IMG/VR virus record: IMGVR_UViG_3300009093_000035
Location: 62,001 to 126,000 of that record
DNA length: 64,000 nt
Strand: one strand, 5' to 3'
The notes beneath the pieces were generated by a model, which was not told the origin of the DNA, ran no database searches, and saw nothing but the letters and a program-made list of their open reading frames with translations. The position numbers were made by a program, and so were the translations under genes. Shown here one piece after another: positions 21,620 to 63,807 of the stretch. Position 1 is the first letter of the stretch, and the number at the start of each line of letters is the position of its first letter.

Positions 21620-21943
21620 TCAGCTCTTCAGAGCGATCGTGTCGGCCACGTCGTCGCGGATGTCCTTCATCGTCGAGAGAGTGGCGTCGAGAAGCTTCAC
21701 GGCGGTGAGGAGATCTTCGCCGGAAGACATTCGAGCCTTGCTCAAGATCTTGAAACACTCCCAGACGTTGAGGTTCGCTGCCTTCAGTTCGACGGCGCGT
21801 CCTTCGAGGAAGCGACGCTGGATGAGGGACATTTCGCCCCAATCGACCCGCCCCTCCTTCAGGAGGGGAAGGATCGAAGGACGAAGCTCCGGCTTCGCGT
21901 GAGCGAGACGGATCAGCTTCGAACGAAGGTGACGTTCCTTCAC
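21620..21943 (-). CDS. IRLAH-tag protein (107 aa)
   Basis: N-terminus LRSKLIRLAHAKPELRPSILPLLKEG. Confidence 0.8.
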   Translation of the reverse strand: MKERHLRSKLIRLAHAKPELRPSILPLLKEGRVDWGEMSLIQRRFLEGRAVELKAANLNVWECFKILSKARMSSGEDLLTAVKLLDATLSTMKDIRDDVADTIALKS

Positions 21944-29086: not shown

Positions 29087-30115
29087 CTACTCGTCGTATT
29101 CCTGAAGGGCCTGGATGAGGAGCCCGTTCGCGACCGCGTTCAGCTGGTCCGTAGCGAGACGAACCTCGCTCACCTCGATCGGGAAGCGCTTCCGCTTCTT
29201 CTCGAAGACCGAGTTGAAGAACTCCAGGAAGCCCTCCGGCTTCGAGGTTCCGCCGGAGACGATGATGGGGATCGCCTTCGGGATCGCGAACTTCCCCTCG
29301 ATCGACTTGAACTGGAGGGCGATCTGGTCGAGGACGTACTCGACGAGGTTCTTGTAGTAGAAGGTGACCGCTTCCTGCTCCCGACCGACGGGCTTCCTCA
29401 GGTCGATCCCCTTCTCCTTCATGGCGCAGATCCGAGCCGCCGTTGATCCGATCGACTTCGCGGCGCCGTTGTCGATCCAATCGCCTCCGCGAGCGACCGA
29501 GAAGGAGAGACCCTCGACGGTAGTGACAGCCAACGAGACGTTCGTCATGCCGCTCCCGAACGAGAGAGCGATCCCGGAGAAGCCTTCCTTCGCGGTCTCG
29601 GCGTAGATGATCGCGAGGGCCTCGTTCCCGGCATGGGCCGTGTACCCGCACTCGGTGACGATCCGGTCGAAGACCCCCTTGTGGTACACGACATCGCGAC
29701 CGGGCTGATCGACGGGAGCCGCTGGGATCGAGAAGAAGCAGTGCTCCCCCTTCGCCTTCGGATCTCCGAGAACGTTCTTCACGAGAAGACCGAGGACCGA
29801 GAGCGAGTCGATCTCGGTCGAGGAAACGAGACCCCCCGAGAGCGGACGGCGAGCCTCCTTCCCGAAGAGATTCGCCATGTCGAGGGCCGCGTCCCCGAGA
29901 ACGAGGATCTCATCGTCCCTCTCGACGTACGAAACGTTCGAGAGCTTCAACATCTTCTTCGCGTCGGAGGGCATGTCGAGGAACGCGTCGCGCATCCGAG
30001 ACGTGTCGATTCCCTTCGCGCTCTTCCGAGCCGAAACGAGGTTCATCGTCCCGACGTCGAGACCGACCCCGAGGTACTGAGCCGTCTTCTCCGCTGCCGC
30101 CTGCTTCTCAGCCAT
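29087..30115 (-). CDS. Actin/Hsp70-fold ATPase (MreB/FtsA/EutJ-like), 342 aa
   Basis: Phosphate-1 GLDVGTMN, connect-1 NEALA, phosphate-2 LSFGSGMT, GGDWID, adenosine IIVSGGTS, connect-2 AVANG, all in the correct order and spacing. Confidence 0.85.
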   Translation of the reverse strand: MAEKQAAAEKTAQYLGVGLDVGTMNLVSARKSAKGIDTSRMRDAFLDMPSDAKKMLKLSNVSYVERDDEILVLGDAALDMANLFGKEARRPLSGGLVSSTEIDSLSVLGLLVKNVLGDPKAKGEHCFFSIPAAPVDQPGRDVVYHKGVFDRIVTECGYTAHAGNEALAIIYAETAKEGFSGIALSFGSGMTNVSLAVTTVEGLSFSVARGGDWIDNGAAKSIGSTAARICAMKEKGIDLRKPVGREQEAVTFYYKNLVEYVLDQIALQFKSIEGKFAIPKAIPIIVSGGTSKPEGFLEFFNSVFEKKRKRFPIEVSEVRLATDQLNAVANGLLIQALQEYDE

Positions 30116-32825: not shown

Positions 32826-33161
32826 TTAGTGGGTCGGGGCTGTCTGGAGGTTCTTCGACGGCAGGATCACCACCGTCCCGTCCGGGGTCATCTGCCAGGG
32901 TGTCCCCGGCGCGATCCCGAGACGCGAAGCCGCAGCGTTCATGAGGCCCTGAGCCTTCTCCTGAACGTCGCTGAGAGACGTGAGGAGACCGGCCTTCCGG
33001 ACTTCCATCTGACCGATGGTCTGGACCAGCTCCTGGGCCTGGCGGTGGAGTCGGGTGAGGTTCTCCACCTCTTCCGGAAGAAGCTTCTGAGCTTCTGCGG
33101 CGGCCTTCGTCGTGTCGGCCTTCGTCATGTCTTCGGCGGTATTGGGGTTCTCGTTGCTCAT
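32826..33161 (-). CDS. Small coiled-coil hypothetical protein (~111 aa)
   Basis: MSNENPNTAEDM... start at 33161 within ORF 32826..33452; heptad-like helix. Confidence 0.6.
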   Translation of the reverse strand: MSNENPNTAEDMTKADTTKAAAEAQKLLPEEVENLTRLHRQAQELVQTIGQMEVRKAGLLTSLSDVQEKAQGLMNAAASRLGIAPGTPWQMTPDGTVVILPSKNLQTAPTH

Positions 33162-33201
33162 TCTCGTTCCCTTTCCTAGGAGCGAAACTCTACCGACCAG
33201 A

Positions 33202-34683
33202 TCAGCCGTTCGGAAGGACCGGCAGGCCCTTCTTCGGCTTCGCCGGAACCGGAGGCGAGTAGACCCCGATCTTGAAGTCAGGCATACGGAGCGCCTTCGC
33301 AGAGCCGTACAACTCCGAGCCGCACCGCGCCTTCCCCGGCTCTTCCTTGTTGTCATCCGAACAGGAGAGACAACCCGTCGGCGGGCACTCCTCGACCTCG
33401 GTGAACGGAGCGCCCGGGGTCTTCCGAGTGAACATCGGAACGCGATGCCCATGGCACTGGTCGGCGGTTAGGAACTCCTTCCCGATCGATACGCCGGTCT
33501 TGTTGATAACCTCTCCCGCCTCATTCCGGACCATCTTGTACTCGTAGCACGTCGCGTACGTGAGACCGAGTCGCTTCGCCGCCGCCTGATAGAGACGATG
33601 ACCGACGATCCGATACTCCTCGGCGATCGTCTTCTGGCCCCCGATGTTCTCCGTGAACAGGCTCTCGAAGACCTTCCCGCGCTCGTCCCCGAAGCGAGAC
33701 TGAATACGCTTCACCATCGCCGGAGCCCAAGAGTAACCGGCCTCGACGAACTTCACGATGACGTGGTCGGCCCCGGCCGCCCTCAGCATCTCGAAGATCT
33801 CGATCACACCCGTATGGTCCACGACACCGGGAAGGATCGGATTGACCTGGATGGAGACGTAGATTCCGCGCTTCTTCAGCTCGCGGATGTCGTCCATGTG
33901 CTCTTCGAGAGAAGCCGCCCCCGGAGAGAGCTTCTTCCAATCCTTCGGGTTCGCCGTGTTGATCGACTTCTGGGCGTAGCTGTACGGGTTCTTCTGGAGC
34001 ATATCGATCGCCCAGCCCGGATACCGGAGACGCGAAAGGAAGAAGATCGGAAGACCCGCGTCCACGAACGCCTGAGCGCCATGCTGGGTGTTGTGGTAGT
34101 AGTTCTCCAAGGGGAGGAACGGATCCGTGAAGCTGGAGAAGTAGCCGGCCGCCGAGGTCTGCATCTTCCCCAGGGCCTTCTTAACCTGGTCCCCGTAGCC
34201 CATCGGGACGCTCACGAGCCCGGAGCCTCGGTAGCCCTTGAAACCGGAGTTGATGTAGCAGAAGGCGCAGCCCACCGTACAGAAGCCTCCGTACGGCTGG
34301 GTGAGGATCGCGTCCGTGAAGCACGGACGGTCTCGAACCCCCTTCGGTTCGGTCTTCGCCTTGTACCAACCCTGGAGCGGGCGCATCGCGTCGATACGGA
34401 TGTGTGGGATCGGATCGAGGAAGACCTGAAGGACGTGCTTGTCTTCGTCCTTCGCGCCCCGGACCATCCCGATCCTCATCTTCCGGGACCGTAGGCCAGT
34501 CTCGGGCTCGACCTCGATGTCCCCCGCTACGTCCTTCGGCTCGGGACGCATGAAGAAGTCGTAGGCCTTCCTAGTGCTCTCCGCGACCCCGCCGGTAGCC
34601 AGCGCCACCTCGTCGGCGACCGCCTCTTCAGGGGTCTCTTCGTCGGCGTTGTTCTCATCCAGCCACGTCAGGATCTGGTCCAT
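33202..34683 (-). CDS. Radical SAM enzyme (SPL-like fold), 493 aa
   Basis: QPYGGFCTVGCAFCY (CxxxCxxC), SFTDPF, VQVNPILPG-type motifs; extra C-terminal Cys cluster (QCHG ... ECPPTGCLSC ... RCG). Confidence 0.88.
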   Translation of the reverse strand: MDQILTWLDENNADEETPEEAVADEVALATGGVAESTRKAYDFFMRPEPKDVAGDIEVEPETGLRSRKMRIGMVRGAKDEDKHVLQVFLDPIPHIRIDAMRPLQGWYKAKTEPKGVRDRPCFTDAILTQPYGGFCTVGCAFCYINSGFKGYRGSGLVSVPMGYGDQVKKALGKMQTSAAGYFSSFTDPFLPLENYYHNTQHGAQAFVDAGLPIFFLSRLRYPGWAIDMLQKNPYSYAQKSINTANPKDWKKLSPGAASLEEHMDDIRELKKRGIYVSIQVNPILPGVVDHTGVIEIFEMLRAAGADHVIVKFVEAGYSWAPAMVKRIQSRFGDERGKVFESLFTENIGGQKTIAEEYRIVGHRLYQAAAKRLGLTYATCYEYKMVRNEAGEVINKTGVSIGKEFLTADQCHGHRVPMFTRKTPGAPFTEVEECPPTGCLSCSDDNKEEPGKARCGSELYGSAKALRMPDFKIGVYSPPVPAKPKKGLPVLPNG

Positions 34684-34718
34684 CGAGTTCTCCTAGAGCG
34701 ACACCACGAATAGGGCCT

Positions 34719-35657
34719 TCATTGACCACACAGAAACACACGACCTTCGTCTCGGTAGATGGTCTTATGACCTTGACGTACCCCGGTCCAGTCGTTGAAC
34801 TCCCCCAACCACTCTTTGGGGAAGACTCGCGCTCGCGCTTTCCAGAAGGGGGACGTCTCGACCACATCACTCTGAAACGGAATTCCAGCTTGTCGAGCCG
34901 GAAGATGGGTCATCTGAAGATCGATGTCATGACCACAATAGTAGTGGCCCTTGCACAGAGAGTTGAAGTCGCACAAGGCCGTCTCCAACTGATCGAGCCC
35001 GGAGAAGGCTACCCCGGCCGTCCGAGAATCTTCGAGGAGAGCCCTCTGGAGCGAGAGATTTGTCGCGCACTCTTTCCAGGACTGTCCGGTGAGACGAACC
35101 ATCCCAGGGATCGGACCCGCGGTCTCCGACCCACCTCCGACCCCTAGGTCTGAGGCCGTGATCGGAAAGTCGTGGACGTGAGCGAGTAGGTCTGCGAGCT
35201 TGTACGAGGACCAGGGACCCGCGTGGGGGATCTTCTGGAACCCCTCGCGAAGCGAGTCCCACCCTTCCGGTCCGCCGGCCTTCGTCAGCCCTTCCAACCA
35301 AGAGGAGAGGTTCCCTCCCGAGGCCTCCAGAACCTTCTCCAGATGAGCCAGAGATAGGAGGTTGCCACGGAAACCTCAACGCTCTGTCCCCGTGGAGAGT
35401 CCTTGAACCTTCTCAGGAGACGGCAACGCCGGGTCTGGGTACAAGTCCCAAACCCGGCTCGCCGAGCCCAAAGAGTACCACGTCACGTAGAGGAGCGTCC
35501 GCCAGAGAGACCTCTCTTTGTCGAGGCCTTCGGCTTGGTAGATCTCCTTCAGCAGCGGGTACGTCGGATCGAGATCTCCTGAGGAGAGCTGGCCGTTCGC
35601 GAAGATACAGAAATCCGCGAAGAGCTGCTTCGCCTCAGGAGCTATCGCTTCCGTCAT
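34719..35657 (-). pseudogene. Amino-acid:DNA transferase (ADDT / aGPT-Pplase2 family) interrupted by one in-frame TGA at 35376-35378
   Basis: ORFs 35376..35657 and 34719..35297 share a frame with no other stop between them. Combined they read GDLDPTY ... WRTLLY ... TGTER*GFRG ... GPWSSYKLADLL ... GP ... LETALCDF ... GHYYCGHDID. Confidence 0.8.
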
Positions 35658-35667
35658 CCAGCGTACG

Positions 35668-38136
35668 TTACGCTGCGACGGGAGGCGTGGTCGAGTAGTG
35701 CTCGGACTTCACGTACACGGTGATCACGAGACCATTCGGAAGAACGAAGAACGTCCCCTCTTCCTTCTCGGCCTTCGTGAGCTTCGCGTCCGGGAACTTC
35801 GTCGTGAACTGCTCGGAGGTGTAGGCGATCGCGTCGAGCGAGTCCGGCACGAGACCCGTCGCCCCGACGTAGAACGCGAGGGGACGGATCCGGTCGTAGA
35901 ACGACTCCACGACGCCTTCGATCCCTTCCAGCGCGTCGTGAACCGCCGCGACAGCCTCGTCACGATCCGCCCCGCGGACCGTCTTCATGAAGTCCTTCCC
36001 GTCGAAGTCCGGGATCAGCTTCATGGTCTTCTGGAGGTCGTCCTCCGACCCGAGACCGAGGAAGCCCTCGTAGATCGGGTACGAGATCGTGTCCACGTAG
36101 TTGAGCTGGGTCCGAGCGGAGAGCTTCTTCACCCCGGTCTTCGCACCGCGAGCGATCTGATCGAGAGTCGGCTTCTCCACTTCCTTCCCGAGGAACTCCA
36201 TGGTGAAGCGACGCTGGAGGTACTCGTTCCCGGAACTGAGCTTCGTCACCGCGGTGAGGCTGGGGACACCGACGTCGATCTTGTACGAAAGACGCGTGTC
36301 GACCTTTCCTTCGGCGATCGCCTTCGCGAGGTCCGCGTACTCGGTCGTCATCGGAGGAGTGAAGTTGAGGGCCGGGCTGAGGTAGTGGGTCTTCAGCTCT
36401 GCGACCTGCTCCGTGGTGTACGAAGCCGACTCGCCCTTGAACATCCCTCCGAGGATCTTCGAGAGGACCGTCAGCTTCGCGAGGCCCACGACCTCGTCCG
36501 GCGAGATCGTGTCGAAGGACGTGTCGTACGCGATCAGCGGAAGATCCGAGAAGTCGATCACGAAGGGCTCGTTCGGCTTGTACTCGCCGGTGACGACGCC
36601 GAGATCCTTCAGCTCGCGGAACGTCCGCTTGTCCGAGGTACGGAAGATGAGCTGGTTGACGTTCAGCGACCCGTCCCCCACGAGCGTGTAGTTGTTGAAG
36701 GAACGGAGCTTCGAGAGGTCCACCCCGGAGACCGAGGCGACCTTCGTCGTCCCGCCGACCGGGTAGATGTCGATCTCTTGGGAGACGAGCATGTTGACCG
36801 TCGCGTTGTTGCGATTGATCTCGAACTTGTTGACCGAGACCCACTCCTCGCCCGCGTTGCGGTAACGCTGCTCGTACTTCGGGGGAGTGACCGTCCCGTC
36901 TTCCTCACGTGCTCCCGGGATGCGCTTCACTCCACGGCGCTTGTAGCCCGCGAGGAGCGTCTTCAGGTTGACCGAGAGCGACGAGGAGCCCCGGTCGAGG
37001 ACCGAGAGAACCGCGAGAACCGAAGCCCCGTTCGACGGAAGACCGAAGTCGACCGAACGATCGTACTTCATCCCGCCCGCGAGAACGTCCTCGATCGCCG
37101 CTGCAAACGCCGCGACGTCCGACGAGACGAGAGCCTTCGCGTGCTTCTTCAGGAGGTCGCCGTTCTTCGAGGCCACGACCGCGTACTTCGCGGCGTTGAG
37201 GCGGCCTTCGCTGATCGCGGCGCGGGCGTACGCGAGGATCGCGACGGCCGAATTCGTGTCGAGAGTCTCCGGAGCCTTCAGCTTCTCGTAGGTCTCCTCG
37301 GAGATCTCGAAGTAGCGGAAGGCCACTCGATCGTCCTTCTCGGAGAGACCGCGAACCACGATCCCCTCCGTCGACCCGAGGACCTTCCGAGCCGCGACCG
37401 AGGCGAACGTGACGTAGTCGGCGTCGCCGATCCCCGCCTCCAGGGCCGGAGACATCGAGCCCGCGAGGAGCGCTGTCGCCCCGTAGAGGGCGTCGTAGAC
37501 CTGCTTCACGTTCTTCGCCTGGATGCACGAACCCGAGAGGGCGTTCGAGATCGAGGAGAGGAGGTTGAAGTCGCAGTAGTCGCGGTAGGCGATCGTGTTG
37601 ACGAAGACGTTCGGGTGCTTCTTCAGCGCCGTCGTGACGGCGGCGATCGCCGCGCTCTCTGCCGTCGGGGACCGATCGTTCGCCCATCCGTCCGTGTGAA
37701 GCGAGACGCACGTCGTCTCCTTGTCGTCGATCAGGGTCTCCGCCATCACGAGGCCCTGGGAGATGCAGGTCATCGCCGTCGCCCGAATCGAGCGGATCTC
37801 CTTCAGCTGAGGGCTGTTCGCCTTCATGACGTCCGCGACCGTCGCTCCCTTGAAGTGGAGCTTCACGTCGCCCGAGGACGAGTAGGTGATGAGAGAGACC
37901 TTCAGGGTCGGGTCGTCGAACTCACCGAGGGTCAGGAGCTTCTCGACCATCGACTTCAGATCCGCCAAGTCGTAGGCCATCGAGCCCGACCGGTCGATCA
38001 CGAAGATGTGATGGGCGGGGTTCTTCTTGGCGATCGCGGCCTGAGACGAGAAGTCGTCCCGCTCGACACGGAAGAACGTCAGGGGCTTCCCTGAATAGGA
38101 GCGAAGCGCGAACTTGGTTGTCTCGGATTTGGACAT
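35668..38136 (-). CDS. vWA-domain protein (822 aa)
   Basis: HHIFVIDRSGSM MIDAS motif, AMT and LHTDG downstream; large uncharacterised C-terminal region. Confidence 0.85.
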   Translation of the reverse strand: MSKSETTKFALRSYSGKPLTFFRVERDDFSSQAAIAKKNPAHHIFVIDRSGSMAYDLADLKSMVEKLLTLGEFDDPTLKVSLITYSSSGDVKLHFKGATVADVMKANSPQLKEIRSIRATAMTCISQGLVMAETLIDDKETTCVSLHTDGWANDRSPTAESAAIAAVTTALKKHPNVFVNTIAYRDYCDFNLLSSISNALSGSCIQAKNVKQVYDALYGATALLAGSMSPALEAGIGDADYVTFASVAARKVLGSTEGIVVRGLSEKDDRVAFRYFEISEETYEKLKAPETLDTNSAVAILAYARAAISEGRLNAAKYAVVASKNGDLLKKHAKALVSSDVAAFAAAIEDVLAGGMKYDRSVDFGLPSNGASVLAVLSVLDRGSSSLSVNLKTLLAGYKRRGVKRIPGAREEDGTVTPPKYEQRYRNAGEEWVSVNKFEINRNNATVNMLVSQEIDIYPVGGTTKVASVSGVDLSKLRSFNNYTLVGDGSLNVNQLIFRTSDKRTFRELKDLGVVTGEYKPNEPFVIDFSDLPLIAYDTSFDTISPDEVVGLAKLTVLSKILGGMFKGESASYTTEQVAELKTHYLSPALNFTPPMTTEYADLAKAIAEGKVDTRLSYKIDVGVPSLTAVTKLSSGNEYLQRRFTMEFLGKEVEKPTLDQIARGAKTGVKKLSARTQLNYVDTISYPIYEGFLGLGSEDDLQKTMKLIPDFDGKDFMKTVRGADRDEAVAAVHDALEGIEGVVESFYDRIRPLAFYVGATGLVPDSLDAIAYTSEQFTTKFPDAKLTKAEKEEGTFFVLPNGLVITVYVKSEHYSTTPPVAA

Positions 38137-38199: not shown

Positions 38200-38679
38200 T
38201 CAGCGAGACTTCTTCTTCAAGTAGTCGGAAGCGCCCTTTGCCGTGAGCTTCGCGTTCTCCGCTACTTCCTTCGCGGCCTCCTGAATCAAGTTCTCGATAT
38301 CCGAGACCTTCTCGTCGGCGTCCAACAAGGTGTCGACGACCTCTTGAGCCTTCTTCGAGTTCATGTCCGCGAGAGCTTCCATCATGTCGCCATACAGCTC
38401 ATCGAGTTCCCCCTGGCCGACCTCGGCGGTCTTCCCAAGAAGCGGAAGGATCTCCGAACGGATCTCCGGCTTCTCGTGAGCGAGACGAATCAGGGATCGG
38501 CGAAGAGAGGAATGCTTGTTCACTTGGATAGCCCGTTCTTGGTTCTCGGCTTTGTCTTTGGAGGGATGGCGTCCCAACAGCCGGTCCCCGTCGCTCGTGT
38601 AGAGACACCACTTCTGCTCGTCGGCGGGACGGTCGTCCTGATCGGAGGGACGACACTCATGGATGACCGCCTTCTTCAT
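38200..38679 (-). CDS. IRLAH-tag protein (internal tag), 159 aa
   Basis: Small N-domain KWCLYTSDGDRLLGRH..., then LRRSLIRLAHEKPEIRSEILPLLGKTA, then an acidic helix. Confidence 0.8.
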   Translation of the reverse strand: MKKAVIHECRPSDQDDRPADEQKWCLYTSDGDRLLGRHPSKDKAENQERAIQVNKHSSLRRSLIRLAHEKPEIRSEILPLLGKTAEVGQGELDELYGDMMEALADMNSKKAQEVVDTLLDADEKVSDIENLIQEAAKEVAENAKLTAKGASDYLKKKSR

Positions 38680-38682
38680 CGC

Positions 38683-39123
38683 TCAGTCGATGAAGCCGTA
38701 GTCCCGGCCGCGACCGGAATCGTTGGACCAACCCCACCGACCCTCTTCCGGGTCGAAGCCGACGCGACCGATCGACTTGCCGTTCGTGCCGCCGTTCGGA
38801 TGGACGTAGTCCCAAGAAAGAGACCCGCCGAGGCCGCCCTGGGCGTCCGACCACCACTCGATCGAGATCGAGATCTCCGAGAAGAGAGACGAGAAGCCCT
38901 TCGGCACCTCGACCTTGACTGAGTTCTCGTTGAGGTTCGACCACTTCACCGGAGCGTCGATCTTCTTGAGAAGAACGTTGATCGCTTCGAGGGCCTTCTT
39001 CTTCGCCTCGTCGTCGAGCTGAGGAAGCCGACCGGCCTTCTTCTCCAGAAGGGGAAGGATCTCCGAGCGGATCTCGGGGTTCGCGTGGGCGAGACGAATC
39101 AGGGAACGACGGAGGGATGCCAT
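38683..39123 (-). CDS. IRLAH-tag protein, 146 aa
   Basis: MASLRRSLIRLAHANPEIRSEILPLLEKKAG. Confidence 0.8.
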   Translation of the reverse strand: MASLRRSLIRLAHANPEIRSEILPLLEKKAGRLPQLDDEAKKKALEAINVLLKKIDAPVKWSNLNENSVKVEVPKGFSSLFSEISISIEWWSDAQGGLGGSLSWDYVHPNGGTNGKSIGRVGFDPEEGRWGWSNDSGRGRDYGFID

Positions 39124-39156: not shown

Positions 39157-39759
39157 CTACTCCGCGGCGATCCCGTAGAACAAGAAGCCGACCGCCGAGC
39201 CCTGGAGCACGATGTCTCCACGGACCTCCCAAGAGCCGAACCCGAACTTGTCCTTCTCGCCCGTGTCTCGGACACTTCGGATCTTCCCCGGAAGAGCGCC
39301 GCTCGCCCGAGCCCAAGTCCCGAAGGCGGATCGAGCCTCCTCGTCCGAATCGGCTCGAAGCACGACCTTCTTCGCCTTCGTCTCAGCTCGGCCGGAGACG
39401 ACTGGGATCGCAAACGCCGGACCCGACTTCGGGTTGTGTCTCACGTCCTGATTGGCGTAGGTCTTTGCCTCCGCAAGGGTCATGCCCTTCGCCCTGAGGA
39501 CGAACCCCTTCCCGGCCTTCTCCAGGATCGTCCCCGAGTACCCGCCCTCGGAATCGTCGTCACGATACGACCGAACGTCGTTCTCCGCGTCCTGTACGAG
39601 CTTCTCGAAGACCTTCTTCGGATCCGTCCCCTCGCCGTACTCCTGGAACTCGGCGCCGCCTGCGGTCTTCGAGAGGAGCGAAAGAAGTGCCGGTCGTAGC
39701 TCGGGCTTCGAGTGCGCGAGACGGATGAGCTTTCGACGCAGCTTGAGGTCGGGGGTCAC
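39157..39759 (-). CDS. IRLAH-tag protein, 200 aa
   Basis: LRRKLIRLAHSKPELRPALLSLLSKTAG. Confidence 0.8.
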   Translation of the reverse strand: MTPDLKLRRKLIRLAHSKPELRPALLSLLSKTAGGAEFQEYGEGTDPKKVFEKLVQDAENDVRSYRDDDSEGGYSGTILEKAGKGFVLRAKGMTLAEAKTYANQDVRHNPKSGPAFAIPVVSGRAETKAKKVVLRADSDEEARSAFGTWARASGALPGKIRSVRDTGEKDKFGFGSWEVRGDIVLQGSAVGFLFYGIAAE

Positions 39760-39793: not shown

Positions 39794-40492
39794 TCAGGGC
39801 TGAGGCGTCGTCGGCTTCTGGAGCCGTTCGGAGACCTCGATGATCTGGTGGGCCGGAATCCAGCGCGTATCCCGCTCCAGAGGCGGGCGAACGTTTCGAC
39901 CAGTGTTCTGGTTCATCGTCCAGAACACCCAGCGAAGACGGTCCTCCTCTTCGCGCGAGCGGAACTTCTCCTTCACGACCCCGACCTTCCCGGTCTTGAA
40001 GTTCACCCCGTTCACGGTCTCTTCGCGAACCGGGCCGTCCTTGTACTGGATCCGAACCTTGTCGCCCGGCTTCAGGTTCAGCTCTTCGAGCTTCTTCCGA
40101 CCCGGCTCCGCAGCGTCGTCCTTCGCGTCCATCCGGTCCTGACGACGGTCGAGAAGCTCGGCCTTCTCCTTCTCGGTCTTCGCCTTGTCGGCCTTTCCGA
40201 CGTAGCGGATCACCTTCGCGTTCGCGTCGTAGCGGGAACCCTTCGCGGGGAAGCGAAGGTCCCCCGCCGACGAAGAGAGCAGAAGTTCGGCGTTCCCGGT
40301 TCGCTTCGTCGTGACGCTGACGATCGTAGCGGGAATCCAACCCTTCCGCGTCTGGACTTCGACGGAGTCCCCTTCGTGGAAGTACCCGTCCGAAGGCGCA
40401 GCTTCCTTCAAGATCGGGATGAGGTGCTCGCGAAGCTCGGGCTTCTCGTGAGCGAGACGGATCGTCTTCGAGCGGAGTTCGTCGTCGTTCAT
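39794..40492 (-). CDS. IRLAH-tag protein with two SH3/KOW-like repeats, 232 aa
   Basis: LRSKTIRLAHEKPELREHLIPILKEAA; GDSVEV ... WIPATIV and LKPGDKVRIQY segments. Confidence 0.8.
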   Translation of the reverse strand: MNDDELRSKTIRLAHEKPELREHLIPILKEAAPSDGYFHEGDSVEVQTRKGWIPATIVSVTTKRTGNAELLLSSSAGDLRFPAKGSRYDANAKVIRYVGKADKAKTEKEKAELLDRRQDRMDAKDDAAEPGRKKLEELNLKPGDKVRIQYKDGPVREETVNGVNFKTGKVGVVKEKFRSREEEDRLRWVFWTMNQNTGRNVRPPLERDTRWIPAHQIIEVSERLQKPTTPQP

Positions 40493-43324: not shown

Positions 43325-43543
43325 CTATTCGTTCAGGAAGATCCGGATGGAGCACCGAGGACACCCGACGTACTTCCGGTCTGACGAGACCATGTAGAAG
43401 GGATCCTCTTCGGTATGGATCTCCGAACGACCGAAGGTGAACTCGGCCTTACATCGACCGCAGGTCGCCCGACCGATCTGAAGCTCCCCGCAGCGAGAGG
43501 CGCGAGACTGACGACGAGCTTTCCGTTGGGAGCGCCCGCTCAC
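43325..43543 (-). CDS. Small Zn-finger-like protein
   Basis: CGRC ... CPRC; GTGA-coupled to the ligase stop. Confidence 0.55.
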   Translation of the reverse strand: MSGRSQRKARRQSRASRCGELQIGRATCGRCKAEFTFGRSEIHTEEDPFYMVSSDRKYVGCPRCSIRIFLNE

Positions 43544-44658
43544 GCCTTCTCCAGGTACCGATTCCCGACGAGCTTCAAGATCACGCGGCCCAACTGAGGG
43601 TCGATCCGCTCGACCTCGGGTTTGACCACGACGCCTTCGGCGTAGTGGGGCTTGAATTTTCCCCCGCTGAGGACACTGTCGGCTTCAGCGAGAGCTTCGA
43701 TCCCCTCGGCGAGGAAAGGTCCGCGATAGACGACAGGAACGCGAGACAGACCGTCCCGACCGTCGCCTCCGAACAGATCCCGAGCGTCCATCCACTTCCG
43801 GTCCCCGAGGTAGACGTCAAAGACGAGGAACGCGGGAAACCCCTGTGGGATCCCGTAGTGCATCTTCTTCGTCGACCGGAAGACCTCGCCGTAGAGGATC
43901 TTGTCTTCGTTTGCTCGGCACCACGTCTCGATCCACGGGTTGGCTCTCAGAGCCGCCCAGAAGACCGACGGGTTCTGGCTCCGGTCCCAGGCCTTCAGGT
44001 CGAGATCTCCGCCCATCTTCCCGGTCCCGGTGTCGATCGTGACGATTCCTGGCTCGACGCTCTCGTCCGGAGGACGCTTCCATTCCGTCCGAGACCCCAC
44101 CCACATCCGACCTCCGCGGAAGGCGTAGCGGGCGCTCTCCCCGTTGATCTTCTCCGTGACGATCACCGGTTCCCCTGGAGTGAAGAGGTCTCGCCACTTC
44201 CTCTTCGTGGCCCTCTCCCCTCCGCGGAAGTTCTCCATGTCGTAGGCGGAGAGATGGGCGAGAGAATCGATCGGACGCTCGCCTTCCTGGCTCTGGATGT
44301 TCGCGTATGGATCGTAGCGGACGATCCCGAGGCGCTCCATGACGTTGTCCCCTTCGGAGACCTTGTCCTTCAACGCCCCGAGCTTCATCAGGAGCCCCTG
44401 GGAGTAGATCCCACGGAACTTCCGGACCTTGATTCGGCGATCGTCGGTCGGTAGGTAGCTCCAGAGAGACGAGAAGGGATGCTCGTTCCCCGGCAAGACG
44501 TAGTCCGGCTCGACGTAGATCGCGAGGTCTCCCGTCGCGAAGTCTTCCGTGCGGACGACGCACGTGTACCCGTCGATCTCGACAAGGCCCAGGGTATCCG
44601 CGGCGGGGTGCTTCTTCACCTCACCGAGTCGAATCACGAAGACGCCGTGGGTACTCAT
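43540..44658 (-). CDS. RNA ligase, Rnl2/DRB0094-like, with N-terminal OB (tRNA-binding-like) module
   Basis: HPAADTL N-domain; motif I TEKINGES; YGEV (III), FDV (IIIa), EGVVVK (IV), ILKLV (V). Confidence 0.88.
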   Translation of the reverse strand: MSTHGVFVIRLGEVKKHPAADTLGLVEIDGYTCVVRTEDFATGDLAIYVEPDYVLPGNEHPFSSLWSYLPTDDRRIKVRKFRGIYSQGLLMKLGALKDKVSEGDNVMERLGIVRYDPYANIQSQEGERPIDSLAHLSAYDMENFRGGERATKRKWRDLFTPGEPVIVTEKINGESARYAFRGGRMWVGSRTEWKRPPDESVEPGIVTIDTGTGKMGGDLDLKAWDRSQNPSVFWAALRANPWIETWCRANEDKILYGEVFRSTKKMHYGIPQGFPAFLVFDVYLGDRKWMDARDLFGGDGRDGLSRVPVVYRGPFLAEGIEALAEADSVLSGGKFKPHYAEGVVVKPEVERIDPQLGRVILKLVGNRYLEKA

Positions 44659-46815: not shown

Positions 46816-46842
46816 TAACGAACGAGGGGACGTCCGCTACAC
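46816..46842 (-). promoter_or_regulatory. GTGTAR-N14-TTCGTTA element, copy 3
   Basis: GTGTAG cggacgtcccCTCG TTCGTTA. Confidence 0.6.
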
Positions 46843-47277
46843 CTTCTCGTACGCGGGCCACTCGGCGGGCCACTGGTTGAGGAGCGTCTGGATCCTCTCC
46901 AGCTGGAGCTGGATGCTCTCGACCGGGACTCCGTGGGCGTTCCGAGCCGCGAGAACTTCCGGATCGAGTTCGGACCGGAAGACGACGAACTCGACCCGGT
47001 AGCCGTGGCGCTCCGCGAGCTTCACGTAGGGAGTGATCTCGGAGACCGTCTGGTTCGTGTTGTCGAGCACGACGAGAGGGAGGCCCTCCTCGAAGGCGCG
47101 GCGAACCTTCGTAGAGCACATCTGATGGGCGTACCCCAGGAACGCGGGATTGAACTTGTACTCGTCCCCGACCATGAAGAAGTCGTCGGCGGAACAGACG
47201 TACGCGTCCGGGAGAGCGTTACACAGCGTGCTCTTACCCGAGCCGCTCGCGCCGATCAGAATCTTGAAGGTCCTCAT
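46837..47277 (-). CDS. P-loop kinase (AAA_33 / PNK-kinase-like)
   Basis: GASGSGKST Walker A, CSADDF, VVLDNTN, LAARNAHGVP; typical of N4BP2/PNK-type kinases. Confidence 0.85.
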   Translation of the reverse strand: MRTFKILIGASGSGKSTLCNALPDAYVCSADDFFMVGDEYKFNPAFLGYAHQMCSTKVRRAFEEGLPLVVLDNTNQTVSEITPYVKLAERHGYRVEFVVFRSELDPEVLAARNAHGVPVESIQLQLERIQTLLNQWPAEWPAYEKV

Positions 47278-48500: not shown

Positions 48501-48844
48501 TGTCGGCCTATCGCGACCCCCCTGGACGTTCCCCGTGTCCGTACCACTGTCGTCAAATAGCAGCGGCCGGATGGGGTGAGGGATGGACCGGGTTGTGGAA
48601 CTGGGAGTGCGTAATGTGTAAGGCGCGCGCTCCCATGTGGAGGTGGATTCTTCTGCCCTTCCTCCCTACCCTCTCTCACATACCGCTGGGACCCGGTCCC
48701 TACCATGTAGTCGACCCGAGACTGACGGAAGCTGAAGCTCTGAGAGTCGGGTGGACGAAAGAACAGATCCAGAAAGAGCGAAAGACGGGCTTACCGAATC
48801 AGCTCGATCGGTGGAAAGAATGGACCTGGGGAGAGCTTCCTTAG
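48500..48844 (+). CDS. Hypothetical Trp/Cys-rich protein (~114 aa)
   Basis: ATG overlaps the upstream TGA; C-terminal part of ORF 47990..48844. Confidence 0.5.
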   Translation: MSAYRDPPGRSPCPYHCRQIAAAGWGEGWTGLWNWECVMCKARAPMWRWILLPFLPTLSHIPLGPGPYHVVDPRLTEAEALRVGWTKEQIQKERKTGLPNQLDRWKEWTWGELP

Positions 48845-49416
48845 AAGGTCGCCCCGAGCTTCCGTAGGTACGCGAGAAGGCCATCGACCTTCGGATTCGG
48901 TACCTTGCTCTTCTGGATATCGATGAGCTTCCCGATCTGAACCGGGTCCGTCTCCTCGATCGAGATCTCCCCGGTGTCCGAAGCCCGAAGAGTTGCAACG
49001 GGCCTCGGGAGCCTCTCGTTGAAGAACACGAAGAGGAGATCTCCGCCGGCCGGGTCGTGCTTCACGATCACCGGATCTCGGACGTAGAGACCCTTCGCCG
49101 ACCACTGGATGTCGTTCCGAACGTTGGAGATCGCCCGGTAGGCCGGCGACATGAGGAGAGCGAGGTTCGCTTCGAGCTTTGCCTGAAGGAAGTTCGCCGC
49201 TTCGTCGTCTCCGATCTCCCGAAGATGGGGGATCAGGTCGTCCGAAGTGACGAACCCGGTCGAGCGAACCGCCTCGTTGATGCGCTCCTGTAGCTCACCC
49301 GAGAACTCGGCCTTCTTCGAAACCGGCTCCTTCGCTTCCTTCAGGAGCGGTAGGAGGATCGGACGAAGCCCGGGGTTCTCGTGGGCCAGGCGGATCATCT
49401 TCGAACGGAGAGTCAT
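48841..49416 (-). CDS. IRLAH-tag protein, 191 aa
   Basis: MTLRSKMIRLAHENPGLRPILLPLLKEAK. Confidence 0.8.
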   Translation of the reverse strand: MTLRSKMIRLAHENPGLRPILLPLLKEAKEPVSKKAEFSGELQERINEAVRSTGFVTSDDLIPHLREIGDDEAANFLQAKLEANLALLMSPAYRAISNVRNDIQWSAKGLYVRDPVIVKHDPAGGDLLFVFFNERLPRPVATLRASDTGEISIEETDPVQIGKLIDIQKSKVPNPKVDGLLAYLRKLGATF

Positions 49417-50531: not shown

Positions 50532-51482
50532 TCAGAGGGCCTTCGAGAAGGTAGAGGAGAAGTCGGAGGCGATCGTTGCGGCTACCGTGGCTACGGCCTT
50601 CTTCGCGGTGAAGACGAGACCCATCTCTCGGTTCGAGGCAAGAGAAGCGTGGGTCAAGTTCTGAGAGCCTACGAACGCAGTCTTCCCGTCTACCACGAAC
50701 GCTTTCGCGTGGATGTAGGGCTTCGTTACGATCCGAACCGGAATCCCGGAAAGCGTCAGTTGATCCGTAGCTGCCTTCCCAGCGGGAGACTCCATCGCAT
50801 CCGACATCACGACGCGAATCGCTACCCCGCGGGCCGCCGCGGACTTCAGGGTCGCGATCGTATTGGCGTCGCTGATCTCCTCGTCCTCCAGATCGATCGT
50901 TTTCTTCGCTCCGGACAGAAGGTCGTGGATGGTCGACTTCGCGTTCAACGGAGAGACCACCAGGGAGCCCGCGTAGGTGGAGATCGGAGTCCCTGCAAAG
51001 TCCCCCTCGAAGACGGCCTCAGCGTCCGCTACGACCTTCGGAAGGGTCGCTACAACCAGGAACTCCCGATTCGACTTCAGCGCCGCCGTAGTGGCGTTCA
51101 TCGTCATGATCCAGGCGGTCTTCCCATCCAGAATCACCGACTTCTGATGGGTGAGAGAGAAGTGGGAAGGGGCCCAGACTACCTTCACCCCAGCAGCTGC
51201 TAGGACGGCGAACTCGTCGTTGTTGTTGTTCGAGAGGCCTGGGTTGAACCTCTGATTGAGGATTACTCGAACGTCGAGCCCGGCCTTCTGGCGATCGATC
51301 AAGGCGTCGATCACGGCCTGAGAAGACAGGAGGTACATCGTCATGTGTACCGAGGTCTTCGCCATCCGAATCGCCTTTACCAGGGCCACGCCAGAGTCCC
51401 CCGGCTCCACTATCACCCGAACGGAACCTCGGGGAATCGAAGCCCTTCGAATCTTCCGGTTTCTGTTCGGGTTGTGGCCCAC
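50532..51482 (-). CDS. Phospholipase D superfamily protein (two HKD motifs)
   Basis: HQKSVILD and HAKAFVVD ... GSQNL ... NREMG. Confidence 0.9.
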   Translation of the reverse strand: MGHNPNRNRKIRRASIPRGSVRVIVEPGDSGVALVKAIRMAKTSVHMTMYLLSSQAVIDALIDRQKAGLDVRVILNQRFNPGLSNNNNDEFAVLAAAGVKVVWAPSHFSLTHQKSVILDGKTAWIMTMNATTAALKSNREFLVVATLPKVVADAEAVFEGDFAGTPISTYAGSLVVSPLNAKSTIHDLLSGAKKTIDLEDEEISDANTIATLKSAAARGVAIRVVMSDAMESPAGKAATDQLTLSGIPVRIVTKPYIHAKAFVVDGKTAFVGSQNLTHASLASNREMGLVFTAKKAVATVAATIASDFSSTFSKAL

Positions 51483-62553: not shown

Positions 62554-63807
62554 TCAGAGCTTCTTCATGACGTCGGTCCACTCTTCGAGGGACTTCCGGT
62601 TCCGACCCACATCGGCCTCCGTAGCGGGCTGGACCACTCCGTTGATCGTGAATCCGGAGCTGCCGTTGGCGTTCGCCTCCAGGAGCTTCTCGTAGAGTTT
62701 CACCTTCATCGGGACGAACTTCTTCAAGATCGTCGTGTCCGCTCCGGGGAAGTCCGAGAGGAACTCCGACATCTGAGCCGCCTCGGAATACTCCCCGAGG
62801 CCGGTCCACTGAACGTGGCCCTTCTCGTCGAGGTACATCGCTCCGGCGAACTTCAGGTAGGTCGAAGCCTTCGGCTTGTTCCAGCGGCCCGTCTTCGGGT
62901 CCATCGTCTGGGAGAGGAAACGGTAGCCCTTCCCGGAGTTGAACTCCAGCCAGAACTTCGCCTGGGTTCGGAGCTTGAACCCGTAGGGGTAGTCGTCGAC
63001 CACATAGGCCGAGTTCGGATCAGTGTGGCCGTAGAGGGGCTTCTTCGTCGAGGCCTTCTTCTCGAACTTCCCGCCCTTGGACTCGATCTTCTTCCGATCC
63101 GCGTCGGTGAGCCGATCCTTCTTGGCCTTGGAGTCCATCATCTCCTGCCACTCGGCTTCGTCTTCGTTCTTCGCCGGTCGCCAGGCGATCACTTCCTTCT
63201 CGGAAGCGGCGTGGTTCGACGGCATCCAGAGATCGTTCTCCTTCGCCGCGAACTCCTCCAGCTTCTGGAGGAACTTCATGTCCGCATCATCGAGAGCCTC
63301 GTAGGCCTCGTCGAGCGTCTTGTACTTCTCGTCGAAGTAGTCCCCCACCATCGCCAAGAACTTCTTCTCCACGTCGGACTCGGCGCCCTTCATGTGGTTC
63401 TTGATCCCCTTGATCATGCTCTGAGTCATGATCCCGCCCGTCTTCGAGAGGAGGGGGAGGAGAAGGGGGCGAAGCTCGGGCTTCTCGTGAGCGAGCCGAA
63501 TCGTAGCTGAACGGAGGTTGGTCATGGCTCGCTTCTCGTTGGGATGTTCTCGGAGATACCGCTCGCGAATAGAGGGATTCTCCCACTGAGGGAAGATGAA
63601 CTCCATCCCCTCCTGCTCGTAGGGAACGCGATTCTTCTTCAGCCAAGCGACGAACAGGTTGGCGGTGCCCCTGGTCCCCCACTCGACTACCGCCCGCGAA
63701 TCGTTCGCCTGGGGATTGCGCGTCGAGTAACTTGAGTTGCCGAACGTGTTCTCATCGTCCGCATCTCTCATCGCTCTGACGAGATCTTCGAATTCGTGGA
63801 AAGCCAT
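62554..63807 (-). CDS. Multidomain IRLAH-tag protein (417 aa)
   Basis: Internal EKRA-MTNLRSATIRLAHEKPELRPLLLPLLSKTGG; C-domain YGHTDPNSAYVVDDYPYGFKLR after EKKAS. Confidence 0.75.
   Translation of the reverse strand: MAFHEFEDLVRAMRDADDENTFGNSSYSTRNPQANDSRAVVEWGTRGTANLFVAWLKKNRVPYEQEGMEFIFPQWENPSIRERYLREHPNEKRAMTNLRSATIRLAHEKPELRPLLLPLLSKTGGIMTQSMIKGIKNHMKGAESDVEKKFLAMVGDYFDEKYKTLDEAYEALDDADMKFLQKLEEFAAKENDLWMPSNHAASEKEVIAWRPAKNEDEAEWQEMMDSKAKKDRLTDADRKKIESKGGKFEKKASTKKPLYGHTDPNSAYVVDDYPYGFKLRTQAKFWLEFNSGKGYRFLSQTMDPKTGRWNKPKASTYLKFAGAMYLDEKGHVQWTGLGEYSEAAQMSEFLSDFPGADTTILKKFVPMKVKLYEKLLEANANGSSGFTINGVVQPATEADVGRNRKSLEEWTDVMKKL

What the first reader, a model, noticed from the sequence alone, without database searches (positions are those of the whole stretch)
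33202..35657. DNA hypermodification module: amino-acid:DNA transferase next to a radical SAM enzyme
Seen directly: an ADDT/aGPT-Pplase2-like gene directly upstream of a CxxxCxxC radical SAM enzyme with an extra C-terminal Cys cluster. Established: in phages such as ViI and M6, a 5-hmdU DNA kinase plus an amino-acid:DNA transferase attach amino acids to thymidine positions, and M6-type pathways use a radical SAM enzyme for further tailoring. Inference: this phage makes a modified thymidine, possibly with new chemistry. The 5-hmU-producing enzyme and kinase are not in this window.
Basis: partly seen in the sequence, partly recalled or inferred. Interest (0 to 1): 0.72.

Follow-up and report, generated by a model that had tools for sequence, protein, structure and literature searches.

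The report
Orphan phage thymidine hypermodification gene pair
A giant soil phage carries two adjacent genes that in phage M6 attach glycine to thymine in DNA and then rearrange it, but the genes that prepare the thymine, and the one that finishes the M6 pathway, were not found in the 248.6 kb of this genome that is available.

Summary
On the minus strand, 34719-35657 encodes an amino-acid:DNA transferase (AADT, Pfam ADDT) and 33202-34683 a radical SAM enzyme. The radical SAM enzyme is 60% identical to phage M6 gp53, the characterised glycinyl-thymine isomerase. It has the same CTVGCAFC motif, and all ten of its cysteines are conserved across the family.

Two corrections. First, the AADT frame in the window has an in-frame TGA (35376-35378) on an invariant arginine, the equivalent of PaMx11 gp46 Arg94. 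Logan assemblies of three runs, including the likely source sample, read CGA there. dN/dS against the nearest relative is 0.14 on both sides of the stop. The gene is therefore most likely intact. Second, the pair is an orphan. The 248.6-kb record (about 56% complete) shows no TET/JBP dioxygenase, dUMP hydroxymethylase, 5-hmdU kinase or PLP decarboxylase. In all 12 complete relatives carrying this AADT clade, a TET/JBP gene sits directly beside it.

The pair occupies a variable cargo slot in a clade of megaphages that reach 485 kb.

Best reading: a working glycine-transfer and isomerisation core of a known pathway, with its partners encoded elsewhere. The predicted product is C-alpha-glycinylthymidine unless a decarboxylase exists. 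This is a new member of a known kind. Interest is modest.

The parts
34719..35657 (-). Amino-acid:DNA transferase gene (AADT / ADDT / aGPT-Pplase2). 312 codons plus a terminal stop. Interrupted in the window by an in-frame TGA.
   Evidence: PF18724 at 28.1 bits against a 26.2 cut-off on the C-terminal part. phrog_6364 hits on both parts. 81% identical to the intact P0001. dN/dS 0.135 against L009.
35376..35378 (-). In-frame TGA at codon 94, on an invariant Arg of the E-R-R motif. This residue corresponds to Arg94 of PaMx11 gp46, the DNA-backbone and base-flipping residue.
   Evidence: cgt tga ggt. Arg is invariant in 18 of 18 relatives. Logan contigs of runs X1, X2 and X3 read G rather than A at plus-strand 35378, giving CGA. 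TGA is the commonest true stop in this genome, 143 of 239 predicted genes, so recoding is unlikely.
33202..34683 (-). Radical SAM enzyme. Orthologue of M6 gp53, the N-alpha- to C-alpha-glycinylthymidine isomerase.
   Evidence: phrog_9252 at E 7e-195. 60% identity to M6 gp53 over 92% of the length. 74% identity to the enzyme in the full cluster of relative G007. AGGAG ribosome-binding site.
34258..34281 (-). CX3CX2C radical SAM cluster motif CTVGCAFC (Cys135, 139, 142).
   Evidence: Translation. The identical motif is reported for M6 gp53 in PMC8989533. Conserved in 12 of 12 family members.
33322..33387 (-). C-terminal cysteine cluster C433, C438, C441, C454. Possibly an auxiliary metal site; its function is unknown.
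   Evidence: Conserved in 11-12 of 12 family members, including M6 gp53.
35668..38136 (-). Flanking VWA-domain gene (822 aa). It marks the upstream border of the variable slot and is not part of the module.
   Evidence: PF13519 and PF00092. Present next to the slot in relatives with and without the module.
32826..33161 (-). Flanking small conserved gene (about 111 aa). It marks the downstream border of the variable slot and is not part of the module.
   Evidence: Homologues lie next to the 464-aa gene in all relatives examined that cover this region. Start codon located.

Best explanation
The two genes are the central tailoring steps of an M6-type thymidine hypermodification pathway, carried as a two-gene cassette in a variable slot of a soil megaphage.

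Shown by homology:
- The AADT flips out a 5-phosphomethyl-deoxyuridine in DNA and replaces the phosphate with the amino group of glycine, giving N-alpha-glycinylthymidine.
- The radical SAM enzyme uses a 5'-deoxyadenosyl radical to break the N-C bond and re-form a C-C bond, giving C-alpha-glycinylthymidine.

Inferred, genes not seen:
- The substrate is made by a thymine dioxygenase of the TET/JBP type acting on replicated DNA, plus a P-loop kinase. Both would be encoded in the roughly 44% of the genome that is not in the record.

No PLP decarboxylase was found. The end product would therefore be C-alpha-glycinylthymidine rather than the 5-(2-aminoethyl)uridine of M6, unless a decarboxylase lies in the missing part.

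The stop codon in the AADT is most likely an error or a minor variant in this one assembly. The likely biological role, as for the known cases, is protection of phage DNA from host nucleases.
For: - The radical SAM enzyme is 60% identical to M6 gp53 over 92% of its length, with the same CTVGCAFC motif and all ten cysteines conserved.
- The AADT passes the PF18724 cut-off. Its family keeps the residues that PaMx11 gp46 uses for the base, the metal and glycine: Asp24, Tyr47/51, Glu92, Arg94, Trp146, Lys150, Glu243, Thr244, Cys247.
- Logan contigs from three runs read CGA at the stop position. In the likely source run this is the only difference in 2501 bases.
- dN/dS against relative L009, which has the same VWA-AADT-radical SAM order, is 0.135 for the AADT (0.11 before the stop, 0.15 after) and 0.055 for the radical SAM N-terminus, at dS about 1 for the AADT and 0.64 for the radical SAM N-terminus. 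The reduced pair has therefore been kept under purifying selection.
- Related megaphages G001 and G007 carry the full set TET, kinase, AADT, PLP enzyme and radical SAM in or beside the same slot.
- The AADT nests in a well-supported 17-member clade of which 13 members are TET-linked.
- The record encodes dCTP deaminase and a ThyX-like enzyme, consistent with thymine in newly replicated DNA and a post-replicative route.
- Phage TET/JBP enzymes have been shown to oxidise T to 5hmU and are linked to kinases and AADTs (PMC13229309).
Against: - No TET/JBP, thymidylate-synthase-type hydroxymethylase, HMUDK, HMUDK helical protein, Ploopntkinase3 or PALP enzyme was found in 248.6 kb. The searches used Pfam models, tblastn, custom HMMs built from relatives, and a Pfam sweep of about 150 further ORFs.
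- In all 12 complete records with this AADT clade, TET lies within about 600 bp of the AADT. A partner encoded far away would be unusual.
- In most relatives the radical SAM gene is accompanied by the PLP enzyme.
- The window as given does contain a stop at a catalytically important residue.
- Contigs cannot exclude a minor TGA allele.
- Glycine specificity is inferred, not tested.
- There are no chemical data on the DNA.
Confidence: 0.6

Rival explanations
1. Decaying remnant. The cassette is what is left of a full TET-kinase-AADT-PLP-radical SAM cluster after its partners were lost. The AADT is now a pseudogene and the phage DNA is unmodified.
For: - There is an in-frame TGA at an invariant catalytic-site arginine in the record.
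- No partner genes were found in 248.6 kb.
- Relatives G001 and G007 have the full cluster at or beside the same slot.
- Most close relatives of the phage lack the module altogether, so it is dispensable.
Against: - Three other assemblies read CGA.
- dN/dS is 0.11-0.15 on both sides of the stop and 0.055 for the radical SAM enzyme, at dS about 0.6-1, and L009 shares the same reduced gene order.
- There are no frameshifts or other stops.
- Intergenic spacers are 10-50 bp and hold no gene fragments.
Confidence: 0.13
2. The pair is functional but its chemistry or substrate differs from M6. The AADT might attach another amino acid or amine, or act on a hydroxymethyl-pyrimidine supplied by non-canonical enzymes. 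The radical SAM enzyme would then perform a related but distinct rearrangement, giving a base not yet described.
For: - The AADT is only about 23% identical to M6 gp51 and belongs to a different, TET-linked clade.
- Canonical partners are missing although the pair is under purifying selection.
- In the same slot, relative L008 combines an AADT with a PanD-like decarboxylase, an unknown 316-aa protein and an FAD oxidase, so tailoring sets are swapped freely.
- The AADT has an atypical GC3 of 0.69 against a genome mean of 0.80, and the tree suggests the module is a mosaic.
Against: - 60% identity and complete cysteine conservation with the characterised isomerase argue for the same substrate, N-alpha-glycinylthymidine.
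- The residues that hold glycine in PaMx11 gp46 (Asp24, Trp146, Lys150) are conserved.
- The candidate non-canonical suppliers found no support. The AlkB-like oxygenase is not associated with AADTs. The AAA_33 kinase also occurs in a relative that has no module.
Confidence: 0.2
3. The radical SAM gene is a DNA repair enzyme (spore photoproduct lyase or 'DNA repair photolyase', as databases label it) and sits next to the AADT by coincidence.
For: PHROG and GenBank annotations call this family 'DNA repair photolyase'. According to PMC8989533, the fold relative of M6 gp53 is spore photoproduct lyase.
Against: - M6 gp53 was shown biochemically to be the isomerase and shares only 13% identity with spore photoproduct lyase (PMC8989533).
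- In the loci examined, family members lie beside other hypermodification genes: an AADT, a PLP enzyme or a kinase-associated helical protein.
Confidence: 0.03

Closest known systems
Pseudomonas phage M6 5-NedU cluster (gp51 AADT, gp52 PLP decarboxylase, gp53 radical SAM isomerase, gp54 5-hmdU DNA kinase; PMC8989533)
   Same: The radical SAM enzyme is 60% identical, with the same CTVGCAFC motif and cysteine pattern. The AADT is in the same Pfam and PHROG family. The two genes lie in the same cluster in both phages: adjacent here, separated only by the PLP gene in M6.
   Different: No PLP decarboxylase, kinase, kinase-associated helical protein or thymidylate-synthase-type dUMP hydroxymethylase was found in 248.6 kb. 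The AADT is only about 23% identical to gp51. The host phage is a megaphage of roughly 440-485 kb, not a 59-kb siphovirus. The record encodes a ThyX-like enzyme and dCTP deaminase, whereas M6 uses a dUMP hydroxymethylase.
PaMx11 gp46 glycinyltransferase (PUGT, PDB 8z2m; PMC11472151)
   Same: Residues aligned with Asp24, Tyr47/51, Glu92, Arg94, Trp146, Lys150, Glu243, Thr244 and Cys247 are conserved in the window's AADT family.
   Different: Similarity is distant (profile E 1e-7). His95 is replaced by Gly or Ser. In the window sequence the Arg94 codon reads TGA. The PaMx11 partners, an FAD lyase and an acetyltransferase, are absent here.
TET/JBP (5mYOX clade C1)-linked AADT clusters of metaviromes (PMC8989533 Fig. 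2 sequences 22-25; PMC13229309)
   Same: The window's AADT nests among TET-linked AADTs. Megaphage relatives G001 and G007 carry TET, a Ploopntkinase3 kinase, AADT, PLP enzyme and radical SAM.
   Different: Here neither the TET gene nor the kinase is present beside the AADT or anywhere in the record. In all 12 complete records the TET gene is the immediate neighbour.
Spore photoproduct lyase (radical SAM DNA repair enzyme)
   Same: It belongs to the same superfamily and acts on thymine methyl chemistry in DNA. It is the source of the database label 'DNA repair photolyase'.
   Different: Sequence relationship is very distant (13% for M6 gp53 according to PMC8989533). The reaction and the gene context are different.

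Membership tests
Amino acid:DNA transferase (Pfam PF18724 ADDT / aGPT-Pplase2) | Sequence match above the curated Pfam threshold | tested here: met
   The C-terminal part scores 28.1 bits against a 26.2 cut-off. The own-genome scan gives 27.2 bits. Both parts hit phrog_6364. Most listed relatives carry PF18724.
Amino acid:DNA transferase (Pfam PF18724 ADDT / aGPT-Pplase2) | Conserved active-site residues of the solved enzyme PaMx11 gp46 (Asp24, Glu92, Arg94, Trp146, Lys150, Glu243, Thr244, Cys247) | tested here: met
   All are conserved in the family alignment and in the window protein except the Arg94 codon, which reads TGA in the window and CGA in three other assemblies.
Amino acid:DNA transferase (Pfam PF18724 ADDT / aGPT-Pplase2) | Uninterrupted reading frame | tested here: inconclusive
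   The window has TGA at 35376-35378. Logan contigs of X1, X2 and X3 read CGA. Contigs cannot exclude a minor allele.
Amino acid:DNA transferase (Pfam PF18724 ADDT / aGPT-Pplase2) | Transfer of an amino acid to 5-phosphomethyl-dU in DNA | not testable with these tools
   Needs an enzyme assay.
M6 gp53-type glycinyl-thymine radical SAM isomerase | Full-length homology to gp53 with the CX3CX2C motif | tested here: met
   60% identity over 92% of the length. phrog_9252 at E 7e-195. The CTVGCAFC motif is identical. Ten of ten cysteines are conserved.
M6 gp53-type glycinyl-thymine radical SAM isomerase | Encoded next to an AADT | tested here: met
   35-bp spacer, same strand. The same adjacency is seen in L009, L034 and L035, among others.
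Complete thymidine hypermodification pathway (M6 / ViI / PaMx11 / TET-linked types) | A source of 5-hydroxymethyluracil (dUMP hydroxymethylase or TET/JBP thymine dioxygenase) | tested here: not met
   PF00303 and PF12851 give no hit at E<=1 in the 248.6-kb record. tblastn and custom HMMs are negative. The record is only about 56% complete, so this is not met for the record and remains open for the genome.
Complete thymidine hypermodification pathway (M6 / ViI / PaMx11 / TET-linked types) | 5-hmdU DNA kinase (PF18748 with PF18723, or PF18751) | tested here: not met
   No hits, or only a P-loop-level hit of 10.9 bits. The custom kinase HMM gives E 0.028 only. The only small P-loop kinase is an AAA_33 protein about 2 kb from an RNA ligase gene, and it also occurs in the module-less relative G045.
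Complete thymidine hypermodification pathway (M6 / ViI / PaMx11 / TET-linked types) | PLP-dependent decarboxylase partner of the radical SAM isomerase (M6 gp52 type) | tested here: not met
   PF00291 gives no hit at E<=1. tblastn and the custom HMM are negative.
Complete thymidine hypermodification pathway (M6 / ViI / PaMx11 / TET-linked types) | Modified thymidine present in virion DNA | not testable with these tools
   Needs LC-MS of nucleosides or raw long-read signal.

The most novel reading that the evidence does not exclude
The AADT and radical SAM pair is a self-sufficient tailoring cassette that works without the canonical partners. Under this reading, the hydroxymethyl or phosphomethyl substrate comes from enzymes of a kind not yet linked to DNA hypermodification. 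One candidate is the accessory 488-aa ThyX-like protein, which the record shares only with another AADT-bearing jumbo phage. Another is an unrecognised dioxygenase and kinase. With no decarboxylase present, the natural end product would be C-alpha-glycinylthymidine, a C-C-linked amino acid on DNA so far known only as an in vitro intermediate.
Probability: 0.12. Interest if true: 0.75.

Novelty: new member of a known kind. Interest (0 to 1): 0.35.

Why it matters
Thymidine hypermodifications shield phage DNA from restriction and other nucleases. Their enzymes are also of interest as tools for writing chemistry onto DNA.

This locus extends the M6-type glycine-transfer and isomerisation enzymes to very large soil phages. 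In that clade the module sits in a swappable cargo slot, with different tailoring sets in different relatives. A two-gene core has been kept under purifying selection without its usual neighbours.

If the partners turn out to be truly absent, the case would point to an unknown way of activating thymine and to an amino-acid-bearing base as a natural end product. If they lie in the unsequenced half, the locus is one more combinatorial variant of a described pathway.

Tried and rejected
- **TGA recoding or read-through.** Rejected. TGA terminates 143 of 239 predicted genes, CGA is a common Arg codon, no tRNA lies in the window, and other assemblies read CGA.
- **A second AADT at genome 239772-239888.** This was a weak tblastn hit to M6 gp51. 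Rejected. It lies antisense to a 694-aa gene, and PF18724 finds only one locus.
- **The AlkB-like 2OG oxygenase (genome 14249-14827) as the thymine hydroxylase.** No support. Its family occurs in only 3 of 28 related or AADT-bearing records, and two of those three (G011, G014) have their own 5-hmU source (TS-type and TET respectively).
- **The AAA_33 kinase (window 46837-47277) as the 5-hmdU kinase.** No support. It scores no better than its P-loop on the kinase models. It lies about 2 kb from an RNA ligase gene. It has a homologue in a relative with no module.
- **The VWA protein and the small downstream gene as parts of the module.** Rejected. Both are conserved whether or not the module is present.
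- **Reaching the rest of the contigs behind L008 and L009.** Not possible; those records are not held.
- **Promoter and terminator scans.** They gave nothing above chance.
- **Limits of the searches.** ORFs under 120 aa outside the window were not scanned.
Full report
**1. What is in the sequence**

The window is bases 62001-126000 of a 248,579-bp linear IMG/VR virus record that CheckV rates 56% complete. GC content is about 61%, and nearly all genes run on the minus strand.

Within the finding's coordinates, 33202-34683 (minus strand) encodes a 493-aa protein with the motif CTVGCAFC. Next to it, 34719-35657 (minus strand) is a single frame of 313 codons that contains one internal TGA at 35376-35378, in the context ...GTER*GFRGN.... 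The spacers between the upstream VWA gene, the transferase, the radical SAM gene and the small downstream gene are about 10, 35 and 40 bp. The radical SAM gene has an AGGAG ribosome-binding site. Promoter and terminator scans found nothing above chance. The four genes therefore look co-transcribed.

**2. Identity of the two proteins**

*Radical SAM enzyme.* It hits phrog_9252 at E 7e-195. By tblastn it is about 60% identical over 92% of its length to gp53 of Pseudomonas phage M6 and its relatives, in 77 phage records in all (confirmed). M6 gp53 was shown biochemically to isomerise N-alpha-glycinylthymidine to C-alpha-glycinylthymidine in DNA, and its Fe-S motif is the same CTVGCAFC (PMC8989533). 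The "extra" cluster is thus a family trait.

*Transferase.* The part after the internal stop passes the curated threshold of PF18724 ADDT (28.1 bits against 26.2). Both parts match phrog_6364, the family of M6 gp51. A search of 5.8 billion proteins returned 159 homologues of 285-325 aa. Nearly all of the 120 listed carry PF18724, and the best is 81% identical. A profile of 18 of these matches the solved glycinyltransferase PaMx11 gp46 (PDB 8z2m) and a second solved AADT, 25qc. The residues that gp46 uses for the flipped base, the metal and the glycine are Asp24, Tyr47/51, Glu92, Arg94, Trp146, Lys150, Glu243, Thr244 and Cys247 (PMC11472151). They align with invariant or nearly invariant positions of the family.

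**3. The internal stop**

The TGA falls exactly on the second arginine of the invariant E-R-R motif, which is Arg in 18 of 18 relatives. This is the counterpart of gp46 Arg94, which contacts the DNA backbone and helps flip the base.

TGA is the commonest genuine stop in this genome (143 of 239 predicted genes) and CGA is a frequent Arg codon. Recoding is therefore unlikely, and a single C-to-T change is the simplest description.

Four public runs hold this DNA. When their Logan contigs were laid on 33200-35700, plus-strand position 35378 reads G, giving CGA, in X1, X2 and X3.
- X1 is the likely source sample. A 73.7-kb contig from it differs from the window at only this one position in 2501 bases.
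- X2 and X3 are other samples, and both also read G.

Against the nearest relative L009, dN/dS is 0.11 before the stop and 0.15 after it.

I conclude that the gene is intact in the population consensus. The stop is either an error or a minor variant of this one assembly. Contigs cannot exclude a rare allele.

**4. The pair lacks its usual partners**

In M6 the cluster is gp51 AADT, gp52 PLP decarboxylase, gp53 radical SAM and gp54/gp55 kinase, with a thymidylate-synthase-type dUMP hydroxymethylase nearby. None of the following was found in the 248.6-kb record:
- PF18748, PF18723, PF00303, PF12851 and PF00291, all with no hit at E<=1.
- PF18751, where only a 10.9-bit P-loop match appeared.
- tblastn with the M6 proteins, and with the TET, kinase, PLP, GGACT, PanD and DAO proteins of relatives.
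- Custom HMMs built from relatives.

A Pfam sweep of about 150 further ORFs was also run. It found replication, RNA-repair and NAD-salvage genes, an MT-A70 methyltransferase, an AlkB-like oxygenase, dCTP deaminase and a ThyX-like protein. It found no hydroxymethylase, no TET and no nucleobase kinase.

Two candidate substitutes were tested and found no support:
- The AlkB-like oxygenase family occurs in only 3 of 28 related or AADT-bearing records.
- The AAA_33 P-loop protein at 46837-47277 lies about 2 kb from an RNA ligase gene and has a homologue in a relative without the module.

**5. Comparative context**

I fetched 42 IMG/VR loci that encode this AADT clade. Their records contain a TET/JBP domain in 32 of 42 cases, and in 12 of 12 records rated at least 90% complete. 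From the coordinates, the TET gene lies within about 100-600 bp of the AADT in every one of those 12. A kinase that matches PF18751 Ploopntkinase3 usually lies within 2 kb. Radical SAM genes nearly always come with a PLP enzyme. A few fragments (L034, L035, L005) do show AADT plus radical SAM without one.

In a maximum-likelihood tree, the window's AADT pairs with L009 (support 100/100). The pair nests in a well-supported 17-member clade in which 13 members are TET-linked.

Phage TET/JBP enzymes have been shown to oxidise thymine to 5hmU after replication, and that clade is linked to P-loop kinases and AADTs (PMC13229309; PMC8989533). The dCTP deaminase (genome 231821-232390) and the ThyX-like protein (genome 227030-228496) in this record fit a phage that replicates with thymine and modifies it afterwards.

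**6. The phage and the slot**

Relatives found through the neighbouring 464-aa protein are very large phages, up to 485 kb at 92% completeness. The interval between the VWA gene and the small conserved gene varies among them:
- AADT plus radical SAM in the window and in L009 (81-89% protein identity, AADT intact).
- AADT, a PanD-like decarboxylase, an unknown 316-aa protein and an FAD oxidase in L008.
- TET, kinase, AADT, PLP enzyme, an unknown protein and an intein-bearing radical SAM gene in G001.
- The full cluster just on the other side of the VWA gene in G007.
- Unrelated small genes in six relatives that lack the module, for example a SNase-like nuclease and an ORF with a methyltransferase-like glycine motif.

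The window's AADT is closest to AADTs of clusters that have no radical SAM gene. Its radical SAM enzyme is closest to those of G001 and G007. The AADT also has a lower GC3 than the genome (0.69 against 0.80 +/- 0.05). The cassette therefore looks like a mosaic.

**7. Interpretation**

The reduced order VWA-AADT-radical SAM is shared with L009 at synonymous divergence of roughly 0.6-1, and the coding sequences show strong purifying selection. The pair has therefore been functional in this form. That requires a phosphomethyl-uracil substrate, and hence a hydroxylating enzyme and a kinase somewhere.

The simplest place for them is the unsequenced 44% or so of the genome. Against that, the tight TET-AADT adjacency in every complete relative makes such a distant arrangement unusual.

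With the isomerase present and no decarboxylase seen, the predicted product is C-alpha-glycinylthymidine, or 5-(2-aminoethyl)uridine if a decarboxylase lies elsewhere.

My probabilities:
- About 0.6 for this main reading.
- About 0.2 for a functional pair with different chemistry or different suppliers.
- About 0.13 for a decaying remnant.
- About 0.03 for an unrelated repair role.

**8. Novelty and score**

The enzymes are clear orthologues of characterised ones. Combinatorial shuffling of these genes in metaviromes, including TET-linked versions, has already been described (PMC8989533, PMC13229309). I file this as a new member of a known kind. The features of some interest are the orphan two-gene arrangement, its place in a megaphage cargo slot, and the predicted un-decarboxylated product. 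Interest is 0.35.

The finding's own refutation test is "no 5-hmdU pathway genes in the genome". It is met for the 248.6 kb that is held and remains open for the whole genome.

Noticed in passing
window 21620-21943, 38200-38679, 38683-39123, 39157-39759, 39794-40492, 48841-49416, 62554-63807 and further ORFs outside the window (genome 140911, 186499, 188123, 205879): At least 12 ORFs, all on the minus strand, share the peptide motif IRLAHxxPELRxxLLPLL. In most it lies within the first 30 residues, ahead of otherwise unrelated sequence. Four of them are in tandem just upstream of the VWA gene. Relatives L007 and L008 have the motif too. It may be a shared targeting or propeptide signal.
   Followed up: partly
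L009:1968-2708 and L061:4482-6887 (relatives' radical SAM genes): In two relatives the radical SAM gene is interrupted by an intein directly after the conserved Cys121 (RDRPC|). The G001 ORF is 801 aa, and the L009 insert includes a GIY-YIG-like segment. The window's copy has no intein.
   Followed up: partly
window 33162-35667 compared with L056-L066: The interval between the VWA gene and the small conserved gene is a variable cargo slot in this megaphage clade. Different relatives hold different DNA-modification sets there, or a SNase-like nuclease with an ORF carrying a methyltransferase-like glycine motif, or other small genes.
   Followed up: yes
genome G000:C1:227030-228496 (minus strand; outside the window): A 488-aa ThyX-like protein (PF02511 at 42 bits, RHR motif at residue 355), about twice the usual ThyX length. 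Its only homologue among nine related or AADT-bearing records is a 561-aa protein in G014, another AADT-bearing jumbo phage. It is absent from the 92%-complete megaphage relative. A dCTP deaminase gene lies 3.3 kb away.
   Followed up: partly
window 43540-44658, 46837-47277, 50532-51482: An RNA ligase with an OB-fold domain, a 146-aa AAA_33 P-loop kinase and a PLD-family nuclease lie close together. Elsewhere the record encodes Thg1, RlaP, a CCA-adding/poly(A) polymerase-like enzyme and Ro60/TROVE. Together these suggest an extensive RNA repair or tRNA maintenance repertoire.
   Followed up: no
window 29087-30115: An actin-like gene (342 aa) whose 72%-identical homologue in L008 carries Pfam PF25216 (Volactin). 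It is conserved next to the structural genes in all relatives examined that cover this region.
   Followed up: no
genome G000:C1:4223-4753 (plus strand; outside the window): A 176-aa ORF with GGQ motifs. It probably accounts for the RF-1 domain hit in the Pfam sweep, as a peptidyl-tRNA hydrolase or release-factor-like protein. It is not linked to the TGA in the AADT, because TGA is the normal stop codon in this genome.
   Followed up: no
genome G000:C1:14249-14827 (minus strand; outside the window): An AlkB-like 2OG-Fe(II) oxygenase (PF13532 at 60 bits). It has homologues in the jumbo phages G011 and G014 but not in the closest megaphage relatives. The homologous stretch in G011 contains one in-frame TGA.
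   Followed up: yes
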